This document shows, one piece after another, positions 10,007 to 36,382 of a stretch of DNA of 36,382 nt. Origin of the DNA: Macrostomum lignano. Lineage: Eukaryota. The position numbers were made by a program, and so were the translations under genes. The stretch is taken from assembly GCA_002269645.1 (NCBI GenBank), contig NIVC01002824.1, positions 1 to 36,382 of the forward strand. Reading direction: 5' to 3'. The notes under the pieces are model-generated. The model searched no databases and was not told where the DNA came from. It saw only the letters and a list, made by a program, of their open reading frames with translations. Within the stretch, counting starts at the first letter, position 1. The number at the start of each line of letters is the position of its first letter.

Positions 10007-10012
10007 TTTATT
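10007..10012 (-). terminator. Candidate polyadenylation signal AATAAA for ADCK1
   Basis: TTTATT on + strand, ~110 nt downstream of the ADCK1 stop. Confidence 0.55.
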
Positions 10013-10119: not shown

Positions 10120-12946
10120 TCAAGCGCTTTCAACGGAAGCAGCCGCTGCGGCCCAGAGGTCCCGGACGATGAGCAGCGCACGGATCAGGCAGAGCCGGCA
10201 GCGCAGGCGGAGCCAGTCGCGCCAGTCGGCGGCTGCCCAGCTGGCCTCGGCCAGGGTGCGCAGGCAGGCGTCCGTCAGCAGGGTGAAAGACAGGCCGGGC
10301 CCGAACCTCTGCCGGCCCGTCAGGCGGTGCTCGATGCCTCTGAGCAGGTCGTTGGCTTTGAATAGCAGCAGCATCTGCCGGGGCACCGACTCCAGCACCT
10401 GCGTCATCTGCGGCAGGAGGCGACCGGCCTCCGACTGAATGGACTGGGTGGGATGGGGCGGCTCTCTAGGTGTGGGATGGGACGACTCTCAGGTGTGGGA
10501 TGGGGCGGCTCTTAGGTGTGGGATGGGACGACTCTCAGGTGTGGGATGGGGCGGCTCTTAGGTGTGGGATGGGGCGGCTCTCAGGTGTGGGATGGGGCGG
10601 CTCTCAGGTGTGGGATGGGACGACTCTCAGGTGTGGGATGGGACGACTCTCAGGTGTGGGATGGGACGACTCTCAGGTGTGGGATGGGGCGGCTCTCAGG
10701 TGTGGGATGGGGCGGCTCTTAGGTGTGGGATGGGGCGGCTCTCAGGTGTGGGATGGGGCGGCTCTCAGGTGTGGGATGGGGCGGCTCTCAGGTGTGAGAT
10801 AGAGGAGGCTGTCAGGTGTGGGATAGGGAGCGATGCTAAGGTGTGGGATGGGGCAGTTCTGAAATATGTTACAGGGAATATTTCAAGCTCAGCCCGCCTA
10901 CCAGCTCCTCCTCAGTGGAGAACTCGCTCCGGCTGACTCCGGCAGAGACGGCCCGCCAGGAGCGGCCGCTGACCATGCAGGCGAACAGGCCGTAGAGATG
11001 GCCGCAGCCCAGGCTGTCAGCGCTGGCCCGGATGCCGGCCAAGTCGCCGTCTATGATGGCGCGCCACAGCCGGCAGTAGCTGAGTCGGAAGTCCGGCGTC
11101 AGCTGGTTGTAGAGGCCGTGGTCTAACAGCACTATGCGGACTCCTGCGAATGGTTGAGTTAGAATGGTAGTGTAAGCATTGGTATCAGTAGTATCGTCAG
11201 TAGTATCGTCAGTAGTATCGTCAGTAGTATTATCAGTAGCATTATCAGTAGTATTAGCAGTAGTGTCATCTCAGTAGCATTATCAGTAGTATCATCAGTA
11301 GTATCATCAGTAGTATCATCAGTAGTATCATCAGTAGTATCATCAGTAGTATCATCAGTAGTATCATCAGTAGTATCATCAGTAGTATCATCAGTAGTAT
11401 CATCAGTAGTATCATCAGTAGTATCACCAGTAGTATCATCAGTAGTATCACCAGTAGTATTATCAGTAGTATTATCAGTAGTAATATCAGAAGTATCTTT
11501 AGTAGTATTATCAAAGTATTAGCAGTAGTATCATCAGCAGTAGTATCAGTAGCAGCAGCAGCCGAGCACTAACCGGAAGGCAGTGCAGGGTCGGGCCGCA
11601 CCAGGAGATTGCCGGGATGAGGGTCGCTGTGCACGAAGCCGCAGTCGAACATCATGCAGCTGTACAGCTGGTTCACCTGCTTCACAATCTGGCGCCTGTC
11701 CAGCCGGTTGGAGCTGATGTACGCCAGGTCGTCAATCTGGCCGCCCCGGCACAGCTCCATGACCAGCACCCGCTTGCTGACCAGGCCGGCCACCGCGCCC
11801 GGAACCTCCAGCCAGGGGAAGCGGCCGCAGTACAGCCGCCGGGCCAGTCGCATGTTCTCGGCCTCGGCGGCGAAGTCCAGCTCGCGCGGCAAATTCCGTC
11901 GGGTCTCGTCGACCAGCCATTGAAAGTGAAAGTCGACGAATAGGCGGGACACCAGGCCCACCAGCCAGTCCATGGTGGCCATGTCGGCCGCGGACCTGGC
12001 CAGCACGTCCGGGTGCTGCACCTTCACCGCCACCGGCGTGCCGTCCAGCAGCTCCGCCCGGTGCACCTGCGCCAGGCTGGCGGCGCCGCACGGTGACGGG
12101 TCGATGCTGCGGAATATGCTGTGCGCCTGGGGATCAGGGAATGGGGCTGAGGGGATCAGGGAATGGGCTGAGGGGATCAGGGAATGGGCTGAGGGGATCA
12201 GGGAATGGGCTGAGGGGATCAGGGAATGGGGCTGAGGGGATCAGGGAATGGGGCTGAGGGGATCAGGGATTGGGGCTGAGGGGATCAGGGAATGGGCTGA
12301 GGGATCAAGGAATGGGCTGAGGGGATCAGGGAATGGGCTGAGGGGATCAGGGATTGGGGCTGAGGGGATCAGGGAATGGGGCTGAGGGGATCAGGGAATG
12401 GGGCTGAGGGGATCAGACAATGGGGCTGAAGGGAACAGATAGATGGGATCCTGTGGGGATTGGTAAGTCAGAGTCACAGACGTGAAGTGGTGATAGAACA
12501 GAAGCAATAAACGCCCCCCCTCTCACCGGCCGGCCAAAGTCCTCCTCGATGACCTGGCGAACCTCTTCAATATTGGAGGCCGGCGCGTCGCTGTGCAGGC
12601 GGCCCAGCACCCGGGTGTAGGGCTCCGGCAGCAGGTAATTAAGTGCGGCCAGGTGCTGCCCGACTTTGACGAAGCAGCCGCGGTTGACGCAGCACAGCCG
12701 GTGCAGCCGGTTGGCCGAGCGCTCGTGCACCTCGGCGATGACGGCCGCGTATTCCGGACTGTCCGGGACTAGGCCGGACAGGCTCCATTTGTAGTCGGCG
12801 GCGACCCGGGCGACGATGAGGCCGGCCCGACCAAATCTGAGGACGCCTCGGACACCTTGGCCAGCAACGGGGTCCGAGTTTGAGTAGCTGGCCGCTGCCG
12901 CTGCCGCTGCCGCCGTGACCGCGACTGCCACTGCTCTGCGGTGATG
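10120..12946 (-). CDS. ADCK1: AarF domain-containing kinase 1 (UbiB/ABC1 family)
   Basis: Exons 12946(5' end uncertain)-12527, 12126-11574, 11143-10902, 10443-10120; all GT-AG and phase-consistent, ~515 aa. Motifs: CFVKVGQHLAALNYLLPE (KxGQ), GAASLAQVH, VAVKVQHP, LPRELDF, GFVHSDPHPGN, VLLDHGLY, VPRQMLLLFKANDLLRGIE. These closely match vertebrate ADCK1. Confidence 0.95.
10447..10860. repeat. 23-bp minisatellite CAGGTGTGGGATGGGGCGGCTCT, ~16 copies
   Basis: ADCK1 last intron. Confidence 0.95.
11185..11550. repeat. 12-bp repeat AGTAGTATCATC
   Basis: ADCK1 intron; explains the MILL-repeat ORF. Confidence 0.95.
12128..12430. repeat. 21-22-bp G-rich minisatellite GGGGATCAGGGAATGGG(G)CTGA, ~13 copies
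   Basis: ADCK1 intron. Confidence 0.95.
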
Positions 12947-13075
12947 CTGCAAGGTGCCGGGTTTCACCCACTCTGGCGGTTAACCAGCGGCTCGCACCTT
13001 AACGTTACCTGGTTGGGCCTTGTATGACCCTTCCCTGACCCTGGTGATCGCATCTGAGTAAGGCTTGACCCTGAC

Positions 13076-13235
13076 CTCACCTGACCCAAGCCCTACCTGA
13101 CCCAAGTCCAACCTGACCCAAGTCCCACCTGACCCAAGTCCCACCTGACCCAAGTCCCACCTGACCTAAGTCCCACCTGACTCAAGTCCCACCTGACCCA
13201 AGTCCCACCTGACCCAAGTCCCACGTGACTCAGGC
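13076..13235. repeat. 16-bp minisatellite CTGACCCAAGTCCCAC, ~9 copies
   Basis: Immediately upstream of ADCK1. Confidence 0.9.
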
Positions 13236-14119
13236 CTGACAAAACTCAGAAAAGACAAAAAACAAATAACTGGAATTTCTTCAATGATATGCTTGGGTAA
13301 ATATACTCGTAAAAAACTGAATATATTATAGATAGTTTACTCAAAAGATCCAGCTATGTCATAAGTCAAAAATTACTTAATTCGACTTAACAAAACCATT
13401 AAGATTAAGCTCTCAATTAATTTTAGACAATTAATTGACCAATTGCCAGCTTTAAAATGAGCCAAAAAAATCAAACATATGATTTATCACGAGATTAACA
13501 ATAAATTGCACAATTAATCTATATTAATGATCAATTACTTGTGGCACATAGCTTTAGCTAGATTACTTTCACTGGAAGAGTCTGCTTATTAAGATGTCTG
13601 TAGCAAAGCAGGAATATCGATAATAATAAAAAACTTACACAAAGCGACCGGGAATCAGAGGTTGAAATCATAGAAATGTCATAGTTCATGAAGCAAGCAA
13701 ATTTAGCTAAGTTGATTATTAATATTAAGACAGCTTATAAAATCAAGTTTAAAACAACTTCAAGAAACAAGTGACTTATATAACACAGTGAACATTTTGT
13801 GATTAACTGTTGCGTTAGTGGAGACGAGTGAAGCCTGGGATTAACACTGCCTTATAACACTTGATAAGTATGTTAAAATGAACAATTAAAATACTGGCAT
13901 ATTACTTCTGAGTAGCAATATTCGCGCATAGGTTTAAACAGTTGATAAAGTCACTTGAATTCTGCCCATCCAGCTGACTGCTGAGCACATACAAGTGCGC
14001 CAGTACTGTACGCAGGTACGCACTCTGTGCACCTGCAGTCTTCTGCTACTCATAGTAATAAAAAATCGGTACACGATTGACAATATTGGAATTAAAAAAG
14101 TACAGCTCAACAAACTCGG

Positions 14120-17100
14120 TCAGGCCAGAGGACTCTGCTGATCCAGCAGCTCTCGCTGCCTGTGCATCAGTTCTTGTTCTACTCGATAAACCCGCCTAGT
14201 TAGACGATTATTGCGCAATCGCAGGTAGCCAATTAGGGAGGCCTGCCTAGCCAGGAGCTCGTCCATGGGATGCGGCTGCTGCTGAGAATGCTGACGATTC
14301 AGAACTGTACTACTTGAAGAAGACGACAAGCCAACGTCAGCAACTGACAGCTTGCCACCAGTGGATGTGGTGAAGGAGCCGAATGGATCGTCAGGTTCTG
14401 TCTCGGCGGCATCAGCCAGCTGCTGATGACCCTCCGAGTAGGCGTCAGGCTGAGGCGATGCGGCCACCGACTGCCGCAGACGGCGCAGCAGCCACAGCAG
14501 CAGGCAGGAGTAGACCAGAGACTCGCAGGCCACCACCAGCATGACCAGATGCTGCGGGTAGAGCGGGCCCAGGCAGGCAGATCCGGTCGAGCTGTCGCCG
14601 CCGCCGATGGGGCAAAGCGACGCGGAGAAGCTGAGCATAGCGGAGAGGCCGGCTGTGACTGCGGGAATCTCAGCGGGGAGTGGGAATGGACCGCGTGTCA
14701 CTTGTCAAATTTTAACGCCCTCTGTAGATGAAATTGCGCCCCCTCAGATGACATGGCGCTTTTACTCAGATGAAATTGCGCCCCCTCAGATGACATGGCG
14801 CTTCCCTCAGATGACATGGCGCTTCCCTCAGATGAAATGGCGCTTCCCTCAGATGAAATGGCGCTTCCCTCAGATGACATGGCGCCCCCTCTCAGATGAC
14901 ATGGCGTCCTCTCAAATTAAATTGCGCCCCTCAGATGAAATTGCGCCCCCTCAGATGACATGGCGCTTCCCTCAGATGACATGGCGCTTCCCTCAGATGA
15001 AATGGCGCTTCCCTCAGATGACATGGCGCTTCCCTCAGATGACATGGCGCTTCCCTCAGATGAAATGGCGCTTCCCTCAGATGAAATGGCGCTTCCCTCA
15101 GATGACATGGCGCTTCCCTCAGATGACATGGCGCTTCCCTCAGATGAAATGGCGCTTCCCTCAGATGACATGGCGCCCCCTCTCAGATGACATGGCGTCC
15201 TCTCAAATTAAATTGCGCCCCTCAGATGAAATTGCGCCCCCTCAGATGACATGGCGCTTCCCTCAGATGACATGGCGCTTCCCTCAGATGACATGGCGCT
15301 TCCCTTAGATGACATGGCGCTTCCCTCAGATGAAATGGCGCTTCCCTCAGATGACATGGCGCCCCCTCTCAGATGACATGGCGTCCTCTCAAATTAAATT
15401 GCGCCCCTCAGATGAAACTGCGCCCCCTCAGGTAAATTGGCGACCCTAAATGAGTGGCACCCCCATAGATGACATAAAGCCCACTCAATTTGAAGCCTTT
15501 TATTCTTTAGCTTTTAAATTGGCCTCACTTGTGAACGCCGGTTGTGATCGAGCCCTTTAATATAAAAATAAATTATATTTTAAGGAGCTGACTGCTGAGC
15601 ACACACAAGCGCGCCAATGCTGTACGCAGGCACGCACTCACAAACACGCTCACCCAGGGTGTACAGCAGCCCTGACTTTCTGATCGTCAGGCATGTACAC
15701 TCTCAGGCATGTGCACTCTCAGGCATGTACACTCTCAGGCATGTACACTCTCAGGCATGTACACTCTCAGGCATGTACACTCTCAGGCATGTACACTCTC
15801 AGGCATGTACACTCTCAGGCATGTACACTCTCAGGCATGTGCACTCTCAGGCATGTACACTCTCAGGCATGTACACTCTCAGGCATGTACACTCAGGCAT
15901 GTGCACTCTCAGGCATGTACACTCTCAGGCATGTACACTCTCAGGCATGTACACTCTCAGGCATGTACACTCTCAGGCATGTACACTCTCAGGCATGTAC
16001 ACTCTCAGGCATGTGCACTCTCAGGCATGTACACTCTCAGGCATGTACACTCTCAGGCATGTACACTCAGGCATGTGCACTCTCAGGCATGTACACTCTC
16101 AGGCATGTACACTCTCAGGCATGTACACTCTCAGGCATGTTCACTCTCAGGCATGTACACTCTCAGGCATGTACACTCTCAGGCATGTACACTCTCAGGC
16201 ATGTTCACTCTCAGGCATGTACACTCTCAGGCATGTACACTCTCAGGCATGTACACTCTCAGGCATGTACACTCTCAGGCATGTACACTCTCAGGCATGT
16301 ACACTCTCAGGCATGTTCACTCTCAGGCATTTACACTCTCAGGCATGTACACTCTCAGGCATGTACACAATTTTCCTAGAATCAGAAGGCAGCCTTCAAA
16401 TACAGCTGAGGCTGGCACCAGCTACTCACAGCAGGCGCAGGTATAGAATGGCAGCCTGGCATAGCGCAGGCAGCAGCGGGCCACGCTGAGGTAGCCCGAG
16501 CGGGTCATTTGCCGACAGAACCAAAGCAGGCAGCCCTGGCAGGTCAGGGCCAAGCCGAACTGCAGACAGTTAATGCTAGCCGAATAAGCCAACTGCAGTT
16601 GCCAGGCGCACATTGGCTCCGAGCTGCCGGCAGTGGTGCTGTTGGGTGGCCGCTTGAACCAGGAAAATATTGCGGTGCAGCTGTACGGCAGCCAGAAGTG
16701 AACTGAGGACAGCACGAGCTGCGGGACAGGCGGAACAGGTTCACTTAGTATATAGTGGGGCGGTAGGCAGGCACGCGCTCTTACAGGGTGTACATGTACA
16801 TCTGCGCTCACTTTCCATCGTAGGGGAGTTTTCGCCACATTAAATAGATCGATTAGGAGGCCAAGGCATTCTAAAGTTTATCTTGTACGAAACCCCAGTG
16901 TTTGTTAAGTTCAGGTGACCATGCCGAGTTAACATTATCATATCATAATGATTCAGAATGCTTTGATCTCCCTATCGATCTACTTAATGTTAAACATCGT
17001 CATCATCATAATCATTATGATTAATCATCATCATAACCATTAAGCATCATCATCATCATCATCATCATCAGAATAACCATTATGATCTCACATCATCATC

Positions 17101-17797
17101 ATCATCAGAATAATCATTATGATCTCACATCATCATCATCAGAATAATCATCATGATCTCACATCATCATCATCATGATCTCACATCATCATCATCATGA
17201 TCATGAACATCATGATCATCAGAACAATCATCATGATCTCACATCATCATCATCAGAACAATCATTATGACGAATCAGCTCAATCTCTAAGAAACTGACA
17301 ATAAGATATCCGCAGTCACAGTACAAGACTTTGCATACACCATTCATCGAGTTTTTTATCTGAAAAAACTATAATTCCCTAAAGCTGTTTCACCTGAGCC
17401 CGGAGACTGCGACCTCCATGTTTACAGAATCCATATACCTAACAAACTGTTTGAAATCAATAGACTATAACACCACCAGTCGGCAGCTCACATAGCCCAG
17501 CAGTGTGGCAATGCAGAAGCAGACGCAAAACAAATCCGGCCGTCTGTGTCGAAAGCGCCGGAAGCAGCAGCTGCAGCACAGGCCGCTGCCCTCAGCGTCC
17601 TCTGCGTCGTTTAACTTATCGAATCTCTCGCTACTGGGACTAAACCGAATCCTAAAGGCGTGTTGCCGGCCTGACAGCAGCGGAACCGTCGGCGACGAAT
17701 ATTCGCCGTTATTGTCGGCGCCGTTAGAGTCGCTGTCGTAATTCGCTAGGTTGACGGGCAGTGTTGCCGGCTGTGGCTGCTGTTGGCTGATGGCCAA
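14120..17797 (-). CDS. TMEM192: Transmembrane protein 192-like (lysosomal membrane protein)
   Basis: Exons ~17800(start unresolved)-17492, 16718-16430, 14658-14120; GT-AG and phase-consistent. Similarity to human TMEM192: PLLSGRQHAFRIRF vs PLL...HFRPRF; RQMTRSGYLSV vs KIRNRGYNLI; LVVACESLVYSCLLLWLLRRL...SPQPD vs [20 protein letters not shown]...KPEPD; DELLARQASLIGYLRLRNNRLTRRV vs [25 protein letters not shown]. Confidence 0.8.
14725..15435. repeat. 21-bp minisatellite CCTCAGATGAMATGGCGCTTC with periodic variant blocks
   Basis: TMEM192 intron 2. Confidence 0.95.
15689..16368. repeat. 16-bp minisatellite TCTCAGGCATGTACAC, ~42 copies
   Basis: TMEM192 intron 2. Confidence 0.97.
16995..17270. 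repeat. Compound (CAT)n microsatellite with AGAATAATCATTATGATCTCAC interruptions
   Basis: TMEM192 intron 1. Confidence 0.9.
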
Positions 17798-17871
17798 CGA
17801 ACCGGAGGCAGCCGATCTTAGCGAAGACAGAAGTCGTTTTTGTTATGATTCTTTTTAGATTTACTCCGCTG

Positions 17872-19103: not shown

Positions 19104-22100
19104 CTACACCAGGTGCTCATTGATGAATCCGGTAGCCAGCATGCGGACTCGTCGAACCGTGCGGTAAGCGAACTGGTCGGTGGGGTCGCAGTTCAGCTCG
19201 TCAATTCGTTTGACCAGGTGCTGCAGTACTCGCTTGCCGTGCTCGCGGACCACCGACTCCTCTGGGCGGAGATAGTCGAATGACTCCTGGGTTCGGGTGG
19301 GTTGCGGGATGGGGCGGCTCAATGACTCACTCAGTGCCACAGTGACTCACTCAGTGCCACACAGTGACTCACTCAATGCAAGACAGTGACTCACTCAATG
19401 CCACACAGTGACTCACTCAATGCAACACAGTGACTCACTCAATGCCACACAGTGACTCACTCAATGCCACACAGTGACTCACTCAATGCAACACAGTGAC
19501 TCACTCAATGCCACACAGTGACTCACTCAATGCAACACAGTGACTCACTCAATGCCACACAGTGACTCACTCAATGCCACACAGTGACTCACTCAATGCA
19601 ACACAGTGACTCACTCAATGCAACACAGTGACTCACTCAATGCAACACAGTGACTCACTCAATGCAACACAGTGACTCACTCAATGCAACACAGTGACTC
19701 ACTCAATGCCACACAGTGACTCACTCAATGCAACACAGTGACTCACTCAGTGCAACACAGTGACTCACTCAATGCAACACAGTGACTCACTCAATGCAAC
19801 ACAGTGACTCACTCAATGCAACACAGTGACTCACTCAGTGCAACACAGTGACTCACTCAATGCAACACAGTGACTCACTCAATGCAACACAGTGACTCAC
19901 TCAATGCAACACAGTGACTCACTCAATGCAACACAGTGACTCACTCAATGCAACACAGTGACTCACTCAATGCAACACAGTGACTCACTCAATGCAACAC
20001 AGTGACTCACTCAGTGCAACACAGTGACTCACTCAATGCAACACAGTGACTCACTCAATGCAACACAGTGACTCACTCAATGCAACACAGTGACTCACTC
20101 AGTGCAACACAGTGACTCACTCAATGACCTATTGACTAACTCAGTTATAACGACCCACTAATGACCTACCTACTGATGACTCGATGCATTCAATGACACT
20201 GAATGACTCGCTCAATGACTTAATGACCACTCATGACCCGACCCACTCGGTTACCTGCAGATAGTCGCACTTCAACTTGGTCCGCTCAAGCAGGTTTCGT
20301 CCCAGCTGCTGAATCAGCGACAAGATAACCTGCTGCTCCAGATTGGGCGACCGGAACAGGTCAAAAGGTTTGACTCTGTTGCACAGATCCAGCACCAGTT
20401 CGAGTCTAGTAGACGACAGCGCCTCCTTGAAAGCCCGATTGTAGTCTTGCATAGCCAAAGCCGAGTTCACCGCCTCGCGATAGTCTTCTATGCGGCGTTG
20501 CTCCTGCTGCTTCTGCGGCACCGGCGTCACCAGGGTTGAGCGCAGAGCCAGGCGTTGCTGCTGTTGCTGCTGTGTGTCCTGCTGCTGTTGCTGCTGCTGC
20601 TGGAACAGCTGTTGCATCTGTTGCTGCATTTGTTGTTGGAACATCTGCTGCTGCTCCTGCATCAGCCGCTGGTGTTGTTCCAGAAATTGGCGCTGCTGCT
20701 GCTGCTGCTGCTCGCCCAGACGGGCCAGGGAGTTGTCAACCTGAGAGGGAATATTTAGGGAAGGGGATTATCCATGTAATCCTGGTTGATTATTCTGGCG
20801 GTTGAAAGGCCGAGTTGAAGGCGACTATCACGATGGTTCGAGAAGCTACTAAGTAGCTAACTAAGTAGCTAGCTGAGTAGCTGATTGGATAGTTGAGTAG
20901 CTGACCAAGTAGCTAGCTGAGTAGCTGACCAAGTAGCTAGCTGAGTAGCTGACTGAGTAGCTGACTAAGTAGCTAGCTGAGTAGCTGACTAAGTAGCTAG
21001 CTGAGTAGCTGATTGAATAGTTGAGTAGCTGACCAAGTAGCTAGCTGAGTAGCTGACCAAGTAGCTAGCTGAGTAGCTGACCAAGTAGCTAGCTGAGTAG
21101 CTGACCAAGTAGCTAGCTGAGTAGCTGACTGAGTAGCTGACTAAGTAGCTAGCTGCGTAGCTAGCTGAGTAGATAGCGATTGTCTAAAAAACGGCATTCT
21201 CACCTCCTTCCGAATAGACTCGGCAGTGGAGCGCAGATCAGATTTCACATCGGTGCAGGCAGCTTTCAGACTGCTAATCTCCTTGTTCTTAACCAGAGTC
21301 TGCTCTCTGGCAATGGCCTCGGTCTCTTCACGCACCTTAGCTATGAGTTCGTTGAGACCTGCGCTGAAAGCGGTGTTAAGCTGCGTGAACAGCTCCTGGC
21401 TCATCTGTTCCAGCCGGGGGAACAACAGGTTGTTGCACATGTCCTTGTAGGCATTCACCAGGGGGCCCTGGATTGCAAATTGGTTGTAGAGAAACAATAA
21501 ATATCAATGTTCGATTCCGCAGCGCGGGTGACGAACGGAACTAGCTGAGTAGCTGAGTAGCTAACTGAATAGCTGAGTAGCTAACTGAGTAGCTGAGTAG
21601 CTAACTGAGTAGCTGAGTAGCTAACTGAGTAGCTGAGTAGCTAACTGAGTAGCCAACTGAGTAGTTAGCTGAATAGCCAACTGAGTAGCTAGCTGAGTAG
21701 CTGACTGAGTAGCTAGCTGAGTAGCTAGCTGAGTAGCCAGTTGAGTAGCTAGCTGAGTAGCTAGCTGAGTAGCTAGCTGAGTAGCCAGTTGAGTAGCAAG
21801 CTGAGTAGCTAGCTGAGTAGCTAGTTGAGTAGCCAACTGACCGGCTGACTGAGTAGCTAAGTGACTAATTGACTAACTAACAAGTAGCTAAACTAACAAA
21901 CTAAGAACTAAAGAAACAGCAATCAAAACATAGAAAGATCTGCTCACCTGCACACACTGAGCAGTGGTTTTGCCAATAGTATCAACGGTGCCTTTCGATC
22001 GAATAAACTTAGTGATATTTTCCTGGACGGCGGCATTCGTAGCCGACATCTCCCGGTGCACCTCGTCGCGGACCTCCTGCTGCAGCCGGTCAAGCGAAGT

Positions 22101-28062: not shown

Positions 28063-28525
28063 GTCACTGACTCAAACAGTCAATGACCCAAACAGTCACT
28101 GACTCAAACAGTCAATGACCCAAACAGTCAATAACACAAACAGTCAATGACCCAAACAGTCAATAACACAAACAGTCAATGACCCAAACAGTCACTGACC
28201 CAAACAGTCACTGACCCAAACAGTCACTGACCCAAACAGTCAATGACCCAAACAATCAATGACCCAAACAGTCAATAACCCAAACAATCAATGACCCAAA
28301 CAGTCACTGACCCAAACATTCAATAACCCAAACAATCAATGACCTAAACAGTCACTGACCCAAACAGTCAATGACCCAAACAGTCAATAACCTAAACAGT
28401 CACTGACCCAAACAGTCACTGACCCAAACAGTCACTGACCCAAACGGTCACTGACCCAAACAGTCACTGACCCAAACAGTCCAGTCACTGACCCAAACGG
28501 TCACTGACCCAAACAGTCACTGACC
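28063..28525. repeat. 16-bp minisatellite CAGTCAMTGACCCAAA, ~28 copies
   Basis: Directly upstream of the EDC4 ATG. Confidence 0.95.
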
Positions 28526-28835
28526 GAAAAGTTATTAACAGAAAAGCAATGCAACAAGAGTGAAATAACAAGTACAATTTCAATTTTAACTTACATTTCT
28601 TGCAGGGATGCCATTGACAATACAACTGAAGATAAATATAGCTTGTTGATTTATATATCATGAATGCACAAGAAGTTTGTTTTTATAAAATTAGTCTTCA
28701 AAAGTACGAGCTGTGTATTGCTTTACTAGTGCTTGAATTTAATATCAAACTCAGACTAAAATCAAATGTAATAAAATGTTCTAAAAACTAAAAAATTCTA
28801 TTTCTATCTTCTCGGAATTGGACTGTTAGAAAACT

Positions 28836-30803: not shown

Positions 30804-33800
30804 TCAGCGTCGAGAAGACGATCGAGAACGTCGTCGTCGACGACGTCGACTGCGGCTTGACGAAGAGCGGCCGCCGTCATCGTCCGATGAGCTCGGACTG
30901 TCGCCGCCGCTACTAGATAAAGCAGCCGCGGTGGCGGTGGCTGCGGAAGCCGCGGCGGCACCTGGAGCGGCCCCGGTAGTGCGCTGGAGAAACTCGTTGA
31001 CGCGCTTCTCGTAATCCTCGGCAGAGAGTTGAGGCTGCTGCACCTGCTGCTGCACCTGGAACTGCTGCTGCTGCTGGTAGGCGTACATAGGCTGCTGCTG
31101 GCCGGGCATCATGTACTGAGCCTGGCCGTACATCATCGCGGCATAGGGATTGGCAGCGGCTGGGTACTGCTGGTAGCCATAAGCCGCATATTGCATCTGC
31201 TGCTGCGATGGCGGCTGCTGCTGAGATGCCTGATCAGCCGGGTTGGACACGGCTGAGCCGAACTGTCTCAGGTAGTCCTGATAGCTGCCATTGATGAACG
31301 TCTCTTTGCCGACGCCTTGAATGTCGCCGTTGCCGCCTTTCGGCGGACTTCGCGATCGGCGAGGCCGGCTCCTTGATCGTCGAGACCGGCTTCTTGACCG
31401 ACGACCGCCGCCTTCGCTAGATCGGCGACGTCGCCTAGACGAAGACGAACCAGAGTCGCGATGGCTTCGATGACGCTGCTGATGTCGGCGACGCTCACCA
31501 GGCGGCGATCGGCGACGATCTGTAGAGGGCGGCGACGACGCTCTCGGCGGCCGGTCCATCGACTGCGAGGGTGGCAGCGGCGGCGGAGGCAGCGAAGCCG
31601 GCTGTTGAAGATACGGCAGCTGCTGCTGATTGGGCGGCATCAGCGGCTGCCCGTGCGGCGCCATCATCGGGGGCGGGTAATGCTGATGATGCTGCTGCTG
31701 CTGCTGGTGATGCTGGTGATGATGAGGCAAGTTGACCCTGCGCCTGGACTTGGTGCGGTCAACCAGGCGATCCAGATCGCAATCGGGATCGAGATGGAAC
31801 AGGCGGCACAGGGCTTGGCCAACGCCCGGCTCAATCTCCTGGCCATCGCGACCGATTTTCACCGGTTTAAATTCGTTCCAAGCGTTCAATAGGTGGCCAG
31901 TTTTATTGAAGCGCAGCTCCCTACGGCTGAGCCAGTCGATGCGAAAGGTGCCGCTGAGAGCGCGATGGCTGAGGCCGGGCGGCAGGACCCAGTTCACCCG
32001 GTTGCTGGATTTCTCCGATGGGCCGGCCAGCCTGGCGTAGCCCTGGGTTCGAATTGCGTGTCAAGGATTTAGGGAGGGGGGGTTTGCGAATTAAAGTCTG
32101 CTTTAAAATATCAGTTTTCTTCTATCAGTGCTGTCGTTTCTTGCAAAGAAGCATCTTACTTTTGCTTGGAAATCACTTGACAACTTCATTCTTTATTGAC
32201 AACCCATTAGCTCATACTTACCTGTGAATAGTATCACTCGTAAGCTACTAATCAAAGTAGTAAGTTAAGCCCTAATAAATACACATTCAATGTTTAGAGC
32301 GTTGAATAATCTTTTCTGCTTTTTGTTGAGAGTAAATCAAATGGATAATATGCCGAAGTCAGAATGTTAAGTTTAGTGGGATAAGGGAAACTGGGGGATG
32401 GGATTAGGGATATGGATAATATGGGATAAGGGACACTGGGGAATGGGATTAGGGAATAGGAATATAGGTAATATGTGATATGGGACACTGGGAACGGGAT
32501 TAGGGAATAGGAATATAGGTAATATGTGATATGGGACACTGGGGAACGGGATTAGGGAATAGGAATATAGGTAATATGGGATAAAGGACACAGGGGAATG
32601 GGATTCGGGATATAGGTAATATGGGATAAGGGACACTGGGGAATGGGATTCGGATATAGGTAATATGGGATAAGGGACACTGGAGAATGGGATTAGGGAT
32701 ATAGGTAATATGGGATAAGGGACACTGGGGAATGGGATTAGGGATATAGGTAATATGGGATAAGGGACACTGGGGAATGGGATTGGGGATCTGGATAACA
32801 TGGGATAAGGGACACTGGGGAATTGGGATGGGATTGGGGATCTGGATAACATGGGATAAGGGACACTGGGAATGGATGGGATTGGGGATCTGGATAATAT
32901 GGGATAAGGGACACTGGGGAATGGATGGGATTGGGGATCTGGATAACATGGGATAGGGGACACTGGGGAATGGATGGGATTGGGGATCTGGATAATATGG
33001 ATAAGGGACACTGGGGAGTGGGTGGGATTGGGGATTTGGATAATATGGGATAAGGGACATTGGGGAGTGGGTGGGATTGGGGATTTGGATAATATGGGAT
33101 AAGGGACTATATCTCTTTTGATTCACCTGAAGAGGACACTAATAGACTACATATGCATAAACCAACCCTATTGATCTGCCCCACAGAGAAACACTTTGCG
33201 GGAGAAACAGTTCAAGTCGCACAACAGGATGTATAATTAGTTATAATAATTAAATCAGTGCAGAAAGACTCAAATATAAAAATATATATCAGCATAGTCA
33301 ATCTAATGAGTCTCTTTAAGCAATCTCTATGTTTGGTATAAAATTAAAAAATCAGATCAAGTTTAGTGTAGACAAGAAAACACAGGTGAAATGCTTGCCA
33401 ATAAAACTTTATAAATAAATAAATTTGTGTGCCAATTTAAGACTAGGTAGGTCATAGCACACACACCTGTCACCTAAATAGAGTCTCCAAAATGCACAGT
33501 CCCCCGAGATAAAAGTTCAATTCAGCAATCAATTTATCAATAACAGTTCCAGCAGGGCGCGGTGCCGATGTGCGTTAATTAAATAACTACCTGGAATCGG
33601 CCGCTCTCCTTCACTGAGAATATCAGATAGACGGAGCGCGACTCGTGATAAGCGCCATTCAATCTGTGCTCATTTGGCGGCGGCGTGGCCCAGACGCCTT
33701 TAGCTTTGGCCAGAGACACGTTCTCATAATTGGAGCTTTTAATCATAAAGTAGCGAGCGTCGCGAAACAGATGATCGAGTTGCTCCGGTTGCTCCGGCGG

Positions 33801-34019
33801 CGGCGAGCCCGCTGCCGCTGCTGAGTCCCCGACGAATACCGGCTGCTGCTGCTGCTCCGAGGCCGCCGCCACCGTCTCCGCCGCCACATTCTCATTGTTG
33901 ACATCGGCCGATTGCATCCTGATTGGCGAGATCGCAGGCTTTGAGAACTGCTCGGCAGCTGTTGATTCATCAGCTGGCTGCTCCTGCTGCTGCTGTTGCT
34001 CAACTTCGGTTGCACTCAT
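30804..34019 (-). CDS. YTHDC1: YTH domain-containing protein 1 (YT521-B), nuclear m6A reader, 2 exons, ~555 aa
   Basis: Exons 34019-33591 and 32042-30804 (phase 0; CAG|GTAGTT, CCCAG|GGC). YTH domain: [37 protein letters not shown]|[47 protein letters not shown]1-type C-terminal motifs: [26 protein letters not shown], and an RS-rich tail. Confidence 0.95.
32375..33105. repeat. ~43-47-bp G-rich minisatellite GGGATAAGGGACACTGGGGAATGGGATTRGGGATMTRGRTAATAT, ~16 copies
   Basis: YTHDC1 intron. Confidence 0.93.
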
Positions 34020-36382
34020 TATCTTTTCTTTGAATAATGATATTATCTTTTTAATTTAATATCACCAAAAATAGTTGGATAATATAGCATAAAGTCAGCA
34101 ATTATTTTGGTAAAGGTTTATCAATTTCCGTATTAAAATATAAGAAGCACTTATGCCTCTATTTCATGCAGAGGCATAAAGCACAATTCTTATTTTTGTG
34201 CTATAAGTGGCAAAAATTTATCAATTATCAAAAAGTAGCAAAAAACATAACTACAAGAAAGGATAAAATCAGCTTATGAAATGATCCTTTTGGGGTTTAA
34301 AATACATTTTACAACTCACCTAGGTGTGCATGTGTCCATGAAGAGTCCATGACTAATTTTGGGCAACCAGAGAGTATCAAGTGTAAAGCATAGAGGAAAG
34401 AATAAGATGTTGGACTGCTAATATGATCTGATAATTTTTGTTTTGTATATATTAATCTCATGTTTTAGCATTACCACAATACTATAAGTGGTTGGGCCAT
34501 TCAGCACATTTGTGTGCAAGCTACTACCAGTTCAGTAGTAAGTTAAACAGAAGCATTTCAATGTATTCTAAGTTGCCCCCAGCTGAACCCCTCCATCATA
34601 TCTTTCCACACCAAACCCCTATTCCCTGCCCCAGTCCCCAATAATTTTATTGCCTTCCACGCCTAGTGTTCCAGCCTAAAGCTGCCTGCCATGTACATTT
34701 CAGTGGTGTTAGGCTAGGCATAATGTATCCCAATAGCAAGAAGCCATTTACATCTGCAAGTCACTGCAACAACTTTTTTATAAAATAGCTTATGCATTCT
34801 TAATCACTACTGATACCTGAACTAAAAGTAGAGAAACTGTTTCACCAAGAAAATATGTCACAATGGCTCATCTAGGTTTACAAGGGGTGTCTGAAAGGTG
34901 TGATACCTTTGCTCATATAGCTTTACTGCATGCTTGAAAATCAACAAGTTTGGTACAATTAAAAAGTGGAATATATGAGCTTAAAGGTGTCAAAAATTAT
35001 CTTCATATATTGTTTTTTAATTATTATTGTCTATTTCAGCTAAGGTGGCCAATAGATCTTAAGAAGCTTAGAGACTGTATGAGGAGATTATTTAATTTGT
35101 ATATTGATCATTTGTCACTCTTTTCTTCTTTTTCTCTTATCTCTTTGCCATATTGTTTATAACTCTGAAACTATTCTATTGCAATCAATGCTATGCATGC
35201 ATACATTTGCAATCTGGGAAAATAATGACATTATTTTCTATTATATAGATCTAAATATTAAAATCATGATTTTATACATAAAAGCTTTTGAAATATGTTA
35301 AAAGTTTGCCAAAATGCAAAATTACATTAAATTATAGTGTATCTCATGGAAAAGATTCATATTTATATACAGAAAACATGCTAAATCATGCATAGGACAA
35401 TATACAATGAAAGTTATTTATGTCTTTAGAAACTAGCCACCCATATTTCTAAAAGCTAATACCAAAGGAGAGCTAATTCCATTACATAGCCTACATAACT
35501 TGTTGTATAGCAGAACTTAATATATATTTAGAAAAAGAATTGCTACAACATAGATCATAGGTCAAAAATGCAGCTTTTGCTATTGGAGTTATGCTTACTA
35601 CTTATAGCCTATACTCTAGATCATGTTGAGTACACGCTAAAAATATCAATCCCAGAGTGCCCTCCTTGGGGACCCCAAAAGATTTTGGTTTTAACCCTAG
35701 GGTTTTAGGCTAGAGGCATTTGAGAACCCTGGAAAAACAAATAAAGTAAAAAATTTGTTTTGAAAAGTTTTTAAATGCTATAAAATTCATCATATCTATA
35801 GCAACAAAGTATGCATTTTTTAGCAAGACTCAAATTGATGATAATAGCTTGATCTATAAGTTTTAAGCTACTTGCAAACTATGATTTGAATGCCACAGCA
35901 ATTTTGCCTAAAAAAATTTATGTAGCAGGTAGATAGATTTGACTATGCCACTATTATAGTGGCATTATATATAGATAAGCAAACAAATAAACCAACATTC
36001 AGGTGGGTAGACAGCTAGGTTTTTTGTCATAGGCATGCCATGTCAAAATTAAAAATGGCATAATTATTTTGATGCTGTTATGCCAAAATGGCATAACAAT
36101 TTTTTGCCATTATGCCATTGCTAAATTGCCAATGCTGAATTTCCAATTCTAAATTGCTTTTAAATTTACCAAACTGGCAAGCTATTATTACTTTATCCCA
36201 CCTAAATCTGAAGGGAAACACTAATATGGGCTCACAAAGTGTTTTTTTTATTTTATGCCAATGGTATATCATAATTGAAAATGACATAATGATTTTGATG
36301 CCATTATAACAAATGGCATAATGATTTTGACATAAAACACCTAGGTAGACAGGATGGCAAATAAGCAATCTATAATATCACA

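What the first reader, a model, noticed from the sequence alone, without database searches (positions are those of the whole stretch)
12940..13060. ADCK1 has no in-frame ATG in its first conserved exon: spliced-leader AUG as start codon?
Between the in-frame TAA (12982-12980) and the exon end (12527) there is no ATG; the first Met lies deep in the kinase domain. A good acceptor CACCTTGCAG| at 12948-12947 is in phase 0. The flatworm SL ends in AUG, which is known to be usable as initiator Met (shown in schistosomes). It would give MHHRRAVAVAVTAAA...SYSNSD, matching the length and character of the human ADCK1 N-terminus. Competing model: ATG 13053, a 15-codon exon ending CAG|GTAACG, and a 62-nt intron to the same acceptor; however, that exon looks like degenerate 16-mer repeat.
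Basis: partly seen in the sequence, partly recalled or inferred. Interest (0 to 1): 0.7.

Follow-up and report, generated by a model that had tools for sequence, protein, structure and literature searches.

The report
ADCK1 start codon supplied by spliced leader
In this Macrostomum lignano contig the ADCK1 kinase gene has no genomic start codon, and it most likely takes its AUG from the trans-spliced leader RNA, a mechanism already known in flatworms, so the result mainly corrects a truncated database annotation.

Summary
The window is the whole Macrostomum lignano Mlig_3_7 contig NIVC01002824.1.

- **Gene:** ADCK1 lies on the minus strand in four exons. There is no in-frame ATG between the in-frame TAA (12982-12980) and residue 190, which lies beyond the KxGQ motif and the VAVKVQHP lysine.
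- **Acceptor:** TTGCAG| at 12952-12947 is the only match nearby to the published M. lignano trans-splice motif [T/C]TNCAG. It is in phase 0.
- **Leader:** the published 35-nt SL has a single ATG, at its 3' end.
- **Predicted product:** joining the SL at 12946 gives a 513-aa protein. Its N-terminus, MHHRR..., aligns end to end with 36 orthologues: 37 residues precede the invariant Arg, and the orthologue median is 37. The ATG-13053 model gives 52.
- **Annotation:** one copy that encodes the same protein carries a GenBank 5'-partial CDS starting at exactly this base. No model in five GenBank copies or three UniProt entries uses ATG 13053. The window's own annotation is a truncated 324-aa protein.
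- **Context:** ADCK1 shares a transcriptional-unit name with the upstream gene TMEM192, which suggests a polycistronic unit.

I could not reach any SL-junction read. SL-AUG initiation is known (Cheng et al. 2006), so this is a new instance of a known kind and of modest interest.

The parts
12947..12952 (-). Proposed SL trans-splice acceptor TTGCAG| (AG at 12948-12947). The exon begins at 12946 in phase 0.
   Evidence: Read. It matches the published M. lignano trans-acceptor motif [T/C]TNCAG (PMC8629364). It is the only such match within about 320 nt. The 5'-partial GenBank CDS PAA53755.1 starts at the equivalent base in copy L002.
12527..12946 (-). ADCK1 coding exon 1: 140 codons, HHRRAVAVAV...EEDFGRP, no ATG in frame, donor GTGAGA.
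   Evidence: It contains the KxGQ motif (KVGQ) of the ABC1/UbiB family.
12980..12982 (-). In-frame TAA that closes the ADCK1 frame 11 codons upstream of the acceptor.
   Evidence: It is present in all five copies.
11574..12126 (-). ADCK1 exon 2. It holds VAVKVQHP and the first in-frame ATG at 11982, which is where the window's GenBank CDS starts.
   Evidence: P0122 (324 aa) starts MATMDW.
10902..11143 (-). ADCK1 exon 3.
10120..10443 (-). ADCK1 exon 4 with the stop codon. The acceptor follows the annotated copies (…EEELSIQSEAG…).
   Evidence: the four exons translate to 512 aa, identical to PAA53755.1 (P0123).
13009..13053 (-). Competing 15-codon ATG mini-exon (MRSPGSGKGHTRPNQ), donor CAG|GTAACG. 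Judged non-coding outron.
   Evidence: GC3 is 0.53 against 0.86 for the CDS. It is one of 16 chance in-phase ATG..GT exons. It would give an N-terminus 15 residues too long. No annotation uses it.
12947..13008 (-). 62-nt stretch that would be the intron in the competing model. Here it is read as the 3' end of the outron.
   Evidence: The five confirmed introns in the window are 400-1771 nt.
13073..13236 (-). 16-mer tandem array (GGGTCAGGTGGGACTT, about 10 copies) in the outron. It has many CAG|GT donor-like sites.
   Evidence: The array is longer in copy L001.
12924..12935 (-). Cluster of downstream alternative AG acceptors, with exon starts at 12935, 12933, 12930 and 12924. All put the SL AUG out of frame.
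   Evidence: SL-AUG ORFs of 52-99 aa. The partial CDS of copy L001 (P0002) starts at +18 and UniProt A0A1I8HBE8 starts at +12.
14120..17827 (-). Upstream same-strand gene TMEM192, exons 17827-17492, 16718-16430 and 14658-14120. Its stop lies 1,173 nt from the ADCK1 acceptor.
   Evidence: One search gives a unique 3-exon solution. One search shows an exact match to PAA55000.1, 'BOX15_Mlig000296g6, partial', which shares the transcriptional-unit prefix of ADCK1 (Mlig000296g1/g5/g7).

Best explanation
The ADCK1 gene of Macrostomum lignano has no start codon of its own in the genome.

**Proposed mechanism**
1. Its pre-mRNA is probably the last cistron of a same-strand unit that includes TMEM192 and possibly EDC4.
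2. The pre-mRNA is trans-spliced at the acceptor TTGCAG| (12952-12947).
3. The 35-nt spliced leader supplies the cap, a 32-nt 5' UTR and its 3'-terminal AUG. That AUG lands in phase 0 directly before CAT CAC CGC AGA...
4. Scanning ribosomes meet this AUG first and make a 513-aa protein, MHHRRAVAVAVTAAAAAAAASYSNSD..., with a short basic, Ala/Val-rich N-terminus like other ADCK1 proteins.
5. The region upstream is outron and is discarded. It holds the 62 nt, the ATG-13053 'exon' and the 16-mer array.

**Shown here**
- the gene structure;
- the lack of an ATG;
- the phase and the motif match;
- the fit to orthologues;
- the start points of the annotated models.

**Inferred**
- that the SL is joined at 12946;
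- that the SL AUG is the codon used for initiation;
- that the unit is polycistronic.
For: 1. **Organism.** The window equals NIVC01002824.1 of M. lignano (L005 is the window's minus strand). The M. lignano SL ends in ATG, and the trans-acceptor motif is [T/C]TNCAG (PMC8629364).
2. **No usable ATG.** There is none in frame from TAA 12982 to residue 190. A start at residue 190 would remove KVGQ and VAVKVQHP, and 73 residues of the Pfam ABC1 domain, which spans 117-364.
3. **Acceptor choice.** Of nine AGs between 12997 and 12924, only 12946 matches the motif. Only 12946 and 12970 give a full-length SL-AUG ORF. The chance of an in-phase motif in this stretch is about 0.026.
4. **Orthologues.** In 36 orthologues, 33-42 residues precede the invariant Arg of VRFGRA (one has 53); the median is 37. 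The SL-AUG model gives 37. MHHRR aligns with MHRR, MLRR and MARK.
5. **Annotated start.** The window's four exons translate to 512 aa identical to PAA53755.1. That 5'-partial CDS starts at the first base after TTGCAG in copy L002. In that annotation, gene 5' ends were cut at mapped SL reads (TBONE; PMC5730564).
6. **Shared unit name.** TMEM192 and ADCK1 share the transcriptional-unit prefix Mlig000296 and have adjacent accession numbers. The gap, adjusted for repeats, is about 1 kb, close to the published operon threshold (PMC8629364).
7. **Precedent.** SL-AUG initiation is established in schistosomes (Cheng et al. 2006, as cited in PMC9851317). It is assumed for Macrostomum (PMC10468722).
Against: - **No direct RNA evidence.** No read, cDNA or peptide showing the SL joined at 12946 could be examined.
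- **Annotated 5' ends disagree.** One copy starts at 0. Another starts at +18 (P0002). A UniProt model starts at +12. Three copies, including the window, start at the internal Met. AGs are dense here, so a partial CDS that begins next to an AG is weak evidence on its own.
- **Other acceptors may compete.** If the sites at +11 or +16 are the main acceptors, the SL AUG is out of frame.
- **Partial starts are not always SL sites.** TMEM192's 5'-partial CDS does not begin at an AG.
- **The competing exon is intact.** ATG 13053, its donor and the acceptor are intact in all five copies. The copies are nearly identical throughout, so this carries little weight.
- **Poly(A) signal.** No AATAAA or ATTAAA lies between TMEM192 and ADCK1, so the 3' end of TMEM192 is undefined.
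Confidence: 0.77

Rival explanations
1. Cis-spliced start. Transcription begins upstream of 13053. The 15-codon exon 13053-13009 is spliced through a 62-nt intron to 12946, giving MRSPGSGKGHTRPNQHHRR... (527 aa).
For: ATG, CAG|GT donor, AG acceptor and phase are all correct. They are intact in all five copies. The peptide is basic and has no acidic residues, so it could extend a targeting sequence.
Against: - It would place 52 residues before the invariant Arg, against 33-42 in 35 of 36 orthologues.
- GC3 is 0.53 against 0.86. Only 1% of 15-codon windows in the CDS are that low.
- The donor GTAACG does not fit the published GT[G/A]AG motif.
- It is one of 16 chance in-phase ATG..GT exons in 1.17 kb.
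- No GenBank or UniProt model uses it, although such a transcript would give a complete ORF. The exact 527-aa sequence is absent from the 15-billion-protein collection.
- The five confirmed introns nearby are 400-1771 nt, not 62 nt.
Confidence: 0.07
2. Another, unrecognised ATG-bearing 5' exon is cis-spliced to 12946. It could lie further upstream in the TMEM192-ADCK1 spacer (for example 13689-13639, donor GTAAGT) or come from a read-through TMEM192-ADCK1 fusion transcript.
For: Candidate exons exist, including one with a consensus donor. UniProt models A0A1I8HDE2 and A0A1I8ISU8 fuse TMEM192 to ADCK1.
Against: - The candidates are AT-rich and would lengthen the N-terminus well beyond that of orthologues.
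- The fusion models skip the conserved ADCK1 N-terminus, join at FGRAG through a repeat-derived micro-exon and drop internal segments. This is typical of ab initio artefacts.
- The transcript-based annotation splits the two genes.
Confidence: 0.07
3. The SL is used, but at a different AG, or initiation is non-AUG. Two versions are possible. In one, the SL joins at the GAG acceptor (exon start 12970), giving MWVKPGTLQHHRR... (521 aa). In the other, a near-cognate codon such as GUG 12967 or UUG 12952 is used on an mRNA that is not trans-spliced.
For: Exon start 12970 is also in phase and open. GTG 12967 opens the ORF in bacterial-style ORF listings.
Against: - GAG| is a poor acceptor and does not match the CAG-centred motif.
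- It would give 45 residues before the invariant Arg, outside the 33-42 range.
- Near-cognate initiation is inefficient and is not needed when an SL AUG is available.
Confidence: 0.05
4. The locus is not translated into full-length ADCK1. It may be a decaying duplicate, or the 324-aa protein from Met 190 may be the real product.
For: The window's GenBank CDS is the 324-aa model. The assembly holds five copies, so there is redundancy.
Against: - All copies keep an open 508-512-codon frame with high GC3 (0.86) across all four exons, including 189 codons upstream of Met 190.
- A 324-aa product would lack the KxGQ motif and the catalytic-lysine motif.
- The 324-aa call is what an ORF finder returns when the transcript model keeps the outron with its TAA.
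Confidence: 0.03

Closest known systems
Flatworm mRNAs that take their initiator Met from the 3'-terminal AUG of the spliced leader (Cheng, Cohen, Ndegwa & Davis 2006, J Biol Chem 281:733; Schistosoma mansoni)
   Same: The SL ends in AUG. The acceptor is in phase with an ORF that has no genomic AUG and has an in-frame stop just upstream. The SL AUG restores an N-terminus like that of orthologues. By the account in PMC9851317, the SL AUG is in frame in 28% of trans-spliced schistosome transcripts, and more than 40 cDNAs need it.
   Different: The species is a free-living macrostomorph and the gene is different. Here the SL junction and the translation are inferred, not shown. I found no experimental test of SL-AUG initiation in Macrostomum in the library searched. 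[quoted passage not shown]
SL-resolved polycistronic transcriptional units (operons) of M. lignano (Wudarski et al. 2017, PMC5730564; Ustyantsev & Berezikov 2021, PMC8629364)
   Same: EDC4, TMEM192 and ADCK1 lie on the same strand. TMEM192 and ADCK1 share a transcriptional-unit cluster name. The spacer is rich in repeats and measures about 1 kb after adjustment for repeats. ADCK1 is conserved with human, which fits the reported enrichment of conserved genes among trans-spliced genes.
   Different: The operon status of this unit was not verified with reads. The spacer lies at the upper edge of the published 1-kb threshold. No canonical poly(A) signal was found for TMEM192.
slORFs: ORFs created by SL-borne start codons (slORFfinder, PMC9851317)
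   Same: The ORF exists only on the trans-spliced mRNA.
   Different: Those were detected from SL reads and ribosome footprints in nematodes, trypanosomes and Oikopleura, often with non-AUG codons. Here the codon is a canonical AUG, and it restores a conserved protein rather than creating a new one.

Membership tests
SL-AUG-initiated flatworm mRNAs (Cheng et al. 2006 class) | The organism has an SL RNA whose exon ends in AUG. | tested here: met
   The window is identified as M. lignano contig NIVC01002824.1. The published SL is CGG...TTGCATG (PMC8629364). The SL holds a single ATG. The SL gene itself is not in the window.
SL-AUG-initiated flatworm mRNAs (Cheng et al. 2006 class) | [quoted passage not shown] | tested here: met
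   TTGCAG| ends at 12947 and the exon starts at 12946, followed by 140 complete codons. It matches [T/C]TNCAG. The chance of an in-phase match is about 0.026.
SL-AUG-initiated flatworm mRNAs (Cheng et al. 2006 class) | No genomic in-frame AUG can give a functional protein, and the frame is closed upstream. | tested here: met
   TAA at 12982-12980. The first Met is residue 190, after KVGQ (95) and VAVKVQHP (173). ABC1 domain spans 117-364.
SL-AUG-initiated flatworm mRNAs (Cheng et al. 2006 class) | The SL-AUG product has an N-terminus like that of orthologues. | tested here: met
   37 residues precede the invariant Arg, and the median of 36 orthologues is 37. The basic pair aligns.
SL-AUG-initiated flatworm mRNAs (Cheng et al. 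2006 class) | The SL-exon junction is observed in cDNA or RNA-seq at that acceptor. | tested here: inconclusive
   The evidence is only indirect. One copy's transcript-based 5'-partial CDS starts at exactly this base. Other models start at +12 or +18. No reads were reachable. Exact look-ups of both candidate full proteins found nothing.
SL-AUG-initiated flatworm mRNAs (Cheng et al. 2006 class) | Translation starts at the SL AUG. | not testable with these tools
   This needs Ribo-seq, N-terminal proteomics or a reporter assay.
ADCK1 / ABC1 (UbiB) atypical kinase family | ABC1 domain with the KxGQ motif and a conserved lysine; best matches are ADCK1 orthologues. | tested here: met
   Pfam PF03109, E = 5.6e-75. 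KVGQ and VAVKVQHP are present. The top non-self hits are proteins named aarF domain-containing kinase 1, at 45-53% identity.
M. lignano SL-resolved operon | Adjacent same-strand genes, a downstream gene that is SL trans-spliced, and a repeat-adjusted spacer under 1 kb. | tested here: inconclusive
   The genes are on the same strand and share the prefix Mlig000296. The distance from stop to acceptor is 1,173 nt. Removing the 164-nt array leaves about 1,009 nt, still including an unknown 3' UTR. SL use at ADCK1 is inferred.

The most novel reading that the evidence does not exclude
ADCK1 is not an isolated case. Two consecutive cistrons of one M. lignano transcriptional unit, TMEM192 and ADCK1, both lack a genomic start codon and depend wholly on the SL AUG. 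This would mean 'start-codon-less' genes are a regular class in Macrostomum operons. At ADCK1, the tight cluster of AG acceptors (0, +11, +13, +16, +22), only one of which is in frame, could then work as a splice-site switch between translatable and untranslatable mRNA.
Probability: 0.15. Interest if true: 0.5.

Novelty: new member of a known kind. Interest (0 to 1): 0.25.

Why it matters
**Practical value.**
- The window's GenBank protein (PAA54999.1 or a sibling accession; the tool lists three for this sequence, 324 aa) is a truncated kinase that lacks essential motifs.
- Two sister copies are flagged 'partial'.
- UniProt holds TMEM192-ADCK1 chimeras.

All of these follow from one cause: gene callers need a genomic ATG that this gene does not have.

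**Use for re-annotation.** The same signature could be used to re-annotate M. lignano: an in-phase [T/C]TNCAG, an upstream in-frame stop, no ATG, and an N-terminus of orthologue length.

**Biology.** It adds a conserved mitochondrial kinase gene from a free-living, early-branching flatworm to the list of likely SL-AUG-dependent genes. This fits the view that the terminal AUG of flatworm leaders is functional across the phylum. It opens no new question.

Tried and rejected
- **Rfam scan of the whole window:** no RNA family found.
- **Search for the SL sequence in the window, up to 3 mismatches:** none, so no SL RNA gene lies here.
- **First homology search, exon 1 alone:** it returned one distant hit and missed the identical M. 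lignano proteins, probably because poly-Ala words swamped the candidate list. The full-length query timed out. A 320-aa query worked.
- **Homology search with the TMEM192 last exon:** nothing found. I instead rebuilt the exact annotated protein by enumerating GT..AG models and looked it up by identity.
- **Exact look-ups of M+512 aa and MRSPGSGKGHTRPNQ+512 aa:** neither is in the collection. No transcript-derived ORF decides between the models.
- **Comparing the five genomic copies for selective constraint on the mini-exon:** the copies are almost identical around the site, so this is uninformative.
- **Literature:**
  - No paper mentions Mlig000296.
  - No supplement is held for PMC8629364.
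  - Cheng et al. 2006 and Wasik et al. 2015 are not held. Cheng et al. is cited through papers that describe it.
- **Codon log-odds for the mini-exon:** the model was trained on the ADCK1 CDS itself. I use only the GC3 contrast, and only as modest evidence.
- **Treating a 5'-partial CDS start as an SL site in general:** rejected, because TMEM192's partial start is not at an AG.
Full report
**1. What is in the sequence**

I read the minus strand of 12400-13500.
- TAA at 12982-12980;
- CACCTTGCAG| ending at 12947;
- an exon from 12946 to 12527 that ends ...CCG|GTGAGA;
- ATG at 13053-13051, opening 15 codons (MRSPGSGKGHTRPNQ) that end CAG|GTAACG at 13009;
- a 62-nt interval from there to the acceptor.

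The in-frame translation from the TAA to 12527 has no Met.

The rest of the gene has three more exons: 12126-11574, 11143-10902 and 10443-10120. The product has a Pfam ABC1 domain (E = 5.6e-75, residues 117-364). Its best non-self matches are proteins named aarF domain-containing kinase 1, at 45-53% identity. In the 513-aa numbering the first Met is residue 190. It lies after the KxGQ motif (KVGQ, 95) and VAVKVQHP (173). No internal ATG can give a functional kinase.

**2. Where the window comes from**

- The closest protein is 'BOX15_Mlig000296g7, partial [Macrostomum lignano]'.
- Looking up cluster members and their contigs showed that one carrying contig, NIVC01002824.1 of assembly GCA_002269645.1 (Mlig_3_7), is 36,382 bp long. 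Its sequence equals the window's minus strand.
- The assembly holds five nearly identical ADCK1 copies: the window (also fetched as L005) plus L001-L004.

**3. How the databases annotate the gene**

- In the window and in two other copies, the GenBank CDS is a 324-aa protein starting at the internal MATMDW (11982..10120).
- In copy L002 (NIVC01003030.1), the CDS PAA53755.1 is flagged partial and has 512 aa. It starts at the first base after TTGCAG. Its sequence is identical, 512 of 512, to the window's four exons translated from 12946.
- In copy L001 the partial CDS starts 18 nt further in, at AVAVT.
- Older UniProt models either start at +12 (AVAVAVT) or fuse TMEM192 to ADCK1. The fusions use a repeat-derived micro-exon and skip the real N-terminus.
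- No model uses ATG 13053.

The 324-aa calls are what an ORF finder returns when the transcript model keeps the outron with its TAA. The partial calls are what it returns when the model begins at or just inside exon 1.

**4. Why the spliced leader is the likely source of the AUG**

- **The leader.** The published M. lignano SL is CGGTCTCTTACTGCGAAGACTCAATTTATTGCATG. The top motif at its acceptors is [T/C]TNCAG, placed right at the junction (PMC8629364). The SL has one ATG, at its 3' end.
- **The acceptors.** I joined the SL in silico to each of the nine AGs between 12997 and 12924.
  - Only 12946 matches the motif.
  - Only 12946 (513 aa) and 12970 (521 aa, behind a poor GAG acceptor) give full-length ADCK1.
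  - The AGs at +11, +13, +16 and +22 give out-of-frame ORFs of 52-99 aa.
- **Chance.** The motif occurs once per 568 nt on this strand. An in-phase copy in the 15 codon boundaries between the stop and the aligned N-terminus has P about 0.026.
- **Annotation method.** The Mlig_3_7 annotation cut transcriptional units into genes at mapped SL reads, using TBONE (PMC5730564). This fits the exact coincidence seen in L002.
- **The +12 and +18 starts.** RNA-seq in that pipeline was mapped end-to-end. Reads carrying SL sequence therefore cannot map, and coverage erodes over the first bases of a trans-spliced exon. This would explain the +12 and +18 starts, but it is my inference.

**5. The test against orthologues**

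I aligned the SL-AUG N-terminus with 36 ADCK1 orthologues from ticks, crustaceans, insects, amphioxus, a crinoid and vertebrates.

| Model | Residues before the invariant Arg of the VRFGRA motif |
|---|---|
| Orthologues | 33-42 in 35 of 36 (one has 53); median 37 |
| SL-AUG model | 37 |
| SL at 12970 | 45 |
| ATG-13053 model | 52 |

MHHRRAVAV aligns column for column with MHRRGLLKL, MLRRFLQL and MARKALKL. A hydrophobic stretch follows in each. This is the strongest argument I could compute that the Met belongs immediately before HHRR.

**6. The competing mini-exon**

- It is one of 16 in-phase ATG...GT exons in the 1.17 kb between the TMEM192 stop and the acceptor.
- Its GC3 is 0.53, against 0.86 for the CDS. 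Only 1% of 15-codon CDS windows are that low.
- Its donor, GTAACG, does not fit GT[G/A]AG.
- The five confirmed introns nearby are 400-1771 nt long, not 62 nt.
- Its resemblance to the 16-mer array is weak. The array is clean from 13236 to about 13073. The mini-exon keeps only a GGGTCAGG/GGGTCA core.
- The five copies cannot discriminate between the models, because the region is nearly identical in all of them.

**7. Genomic context**

- YTH-domain gene, EDC4, TMEM192 and ADCK1 all lie on the minus strand. The next gene downstream is convergent.
- I rebuilt the annotated TMEM192 protein by enumerating splice models, which gave a single solution. I then looked it up by identity. It is PAA55000.1, 'BOX15_Mlig000296g6, partial'.
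- TMEM192 (g2, g6) and ADCK1 (g1, g5, g7) therefore share one transcriptional-unit cluster name and have adjacent accession numbers. This points to a multi-gene precursor that was cut into separate genes.
- The distance from the TMEM192 stop to the ADCK1 acceptor is 1,173 nt. Without the array it is about 1,009 nt, close to the published repeat-adjusted 1-kb operon threshold.
- The polycistronic reading is plausible but not shown.

**8. What is missing**

- I could not reach any read, cDNA or peptide.
- Exact look-ups of both candidate full-length proteins found neither in the collection.
- The annotated 5' ends disagree between copies, and AGs are dense here. The annotation evidence alone would therefore be weak.
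- My confidence of 0.77 rests on five lines that agree: the absence of an ATG, the motif with its phase, the fit to orthologues, the exact start in one copy, and the known biology.

**9. Comparison with what is known**

- Use of the flatworm SL 3'-terminal AUG as initiator Met was shown in Schistosoma mansoni (Cheng et al. 2006). By the account in PMC9851317, the AUG is in frame in 28% of trans-spliced transcripts, and more than 40 cDNAs need it.
- Papers on tapeworms and schistosomes repeat this as a general flatworm feature.
- The mechanism is therefore known. The ADCK1 instance, and the explanation it gives for four kinds of faulty database model, are new but modest.

**Verdict.** This is a new member of a known kind, with interest 0.25.

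Noticed in passing
window 17827-17492, 16718-16430, 14658-14120 (minus); in-frame TAA at 17845-17843: The upstream gene TMEM192 also has no usable ATG. Its GenBank CDS is 5'-partial and starts SSLRS... at 17827, which does not follow an AG. The first Met is residue 148 of 387, after the first hydrophobic segment. About 230 nt from the CDS start hold no ATG in any frame. In-phase CAG| acceptors sit at exon starts 17779, 17776 and 17770 (CAA CAG|CAG|CCA CAG|CCG). This may be a second SL-AUG-dependent gene in the same unit.
   Followed up: partly
UniProt A0A1I8HDE2 (P0125), A0A1I8ISU8 (P0129), A0A1I8HBE8 (P0128); relates to window 17827-10120: Older M. lignano gene models fuse TMEM192 to ADCK1 (815 and 817 aa). 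They join ...ELLDQQS to a micro-exon LSHVGLG taken from the start of the 16-mer array, and then to FGRAG. They skip the true ADCK1 N-terminus and some internal segments. These are probably prediction artefacts caused by the missing ATG.
   Followed up: partly
window 12129-12438, 11184-11552, 10448-10854: Each of the three ADCK1 introns consists mostly of its own tandem array (periods 22, 12 and 23 nt). The whole 36-kb window holds more than 20 separate arrays, which occupy nearly every intron and spacer.
   Followed up: partly
window 28063-28529 and 13073-13236 (minus strand): The arrays just upstream of the first coding exons of EDC4 (16-mer TGTTTGGGTCATTGAC) and of ADCK1 (16-mer GGGTCAGGTGGGACTT) share the period and a GGGTCA core. 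EDC4 has an in-frame ATG at 28057, right after its array. The nearby AACAG| acceptor is out of phase.
   Followed up: no
L003 and L004 (NIVC01001631.1, record about 19110-21329 reversed and 32272-34491): Two further ADCK1 copies lie in opposite orientation about 11 kb apart on one contig. Each has a truncated 215-aa TMEM192 fragment upstream (BOX15_Mlig012747g1). This looks like an inverted duplication of the TMEM192-ADCK1 pair.
   Followed up: no
L001 10018-10040 against window 12929-12905: The Ala tract of the ADCK1 N-terminus is a (GCGGCA)n repeat that differs in length between copies: 8 Ala in the window and 10 in L001. The 16-mer array is also about 150 nt longer in L001.
   Followed up: partly
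window 34019-33579 and 31997-30804 (minus): A YTH-domain gene (…[25 protein letters not shown]…) with an ordinary ATG start at 34019 lies upstream of EDC4 on the same strand.
   Followed up: no
window 14119-12947 (minus): There is no AATAAA or ATTAAA between the TMEM192 stop and the ADCK1 acceptor, so the TMEM192 poly(A) signal is non-canonical or not recognised. ADCK1 has AATAAA about 100 nt after its own stop (near 10012).
   Followed up: no
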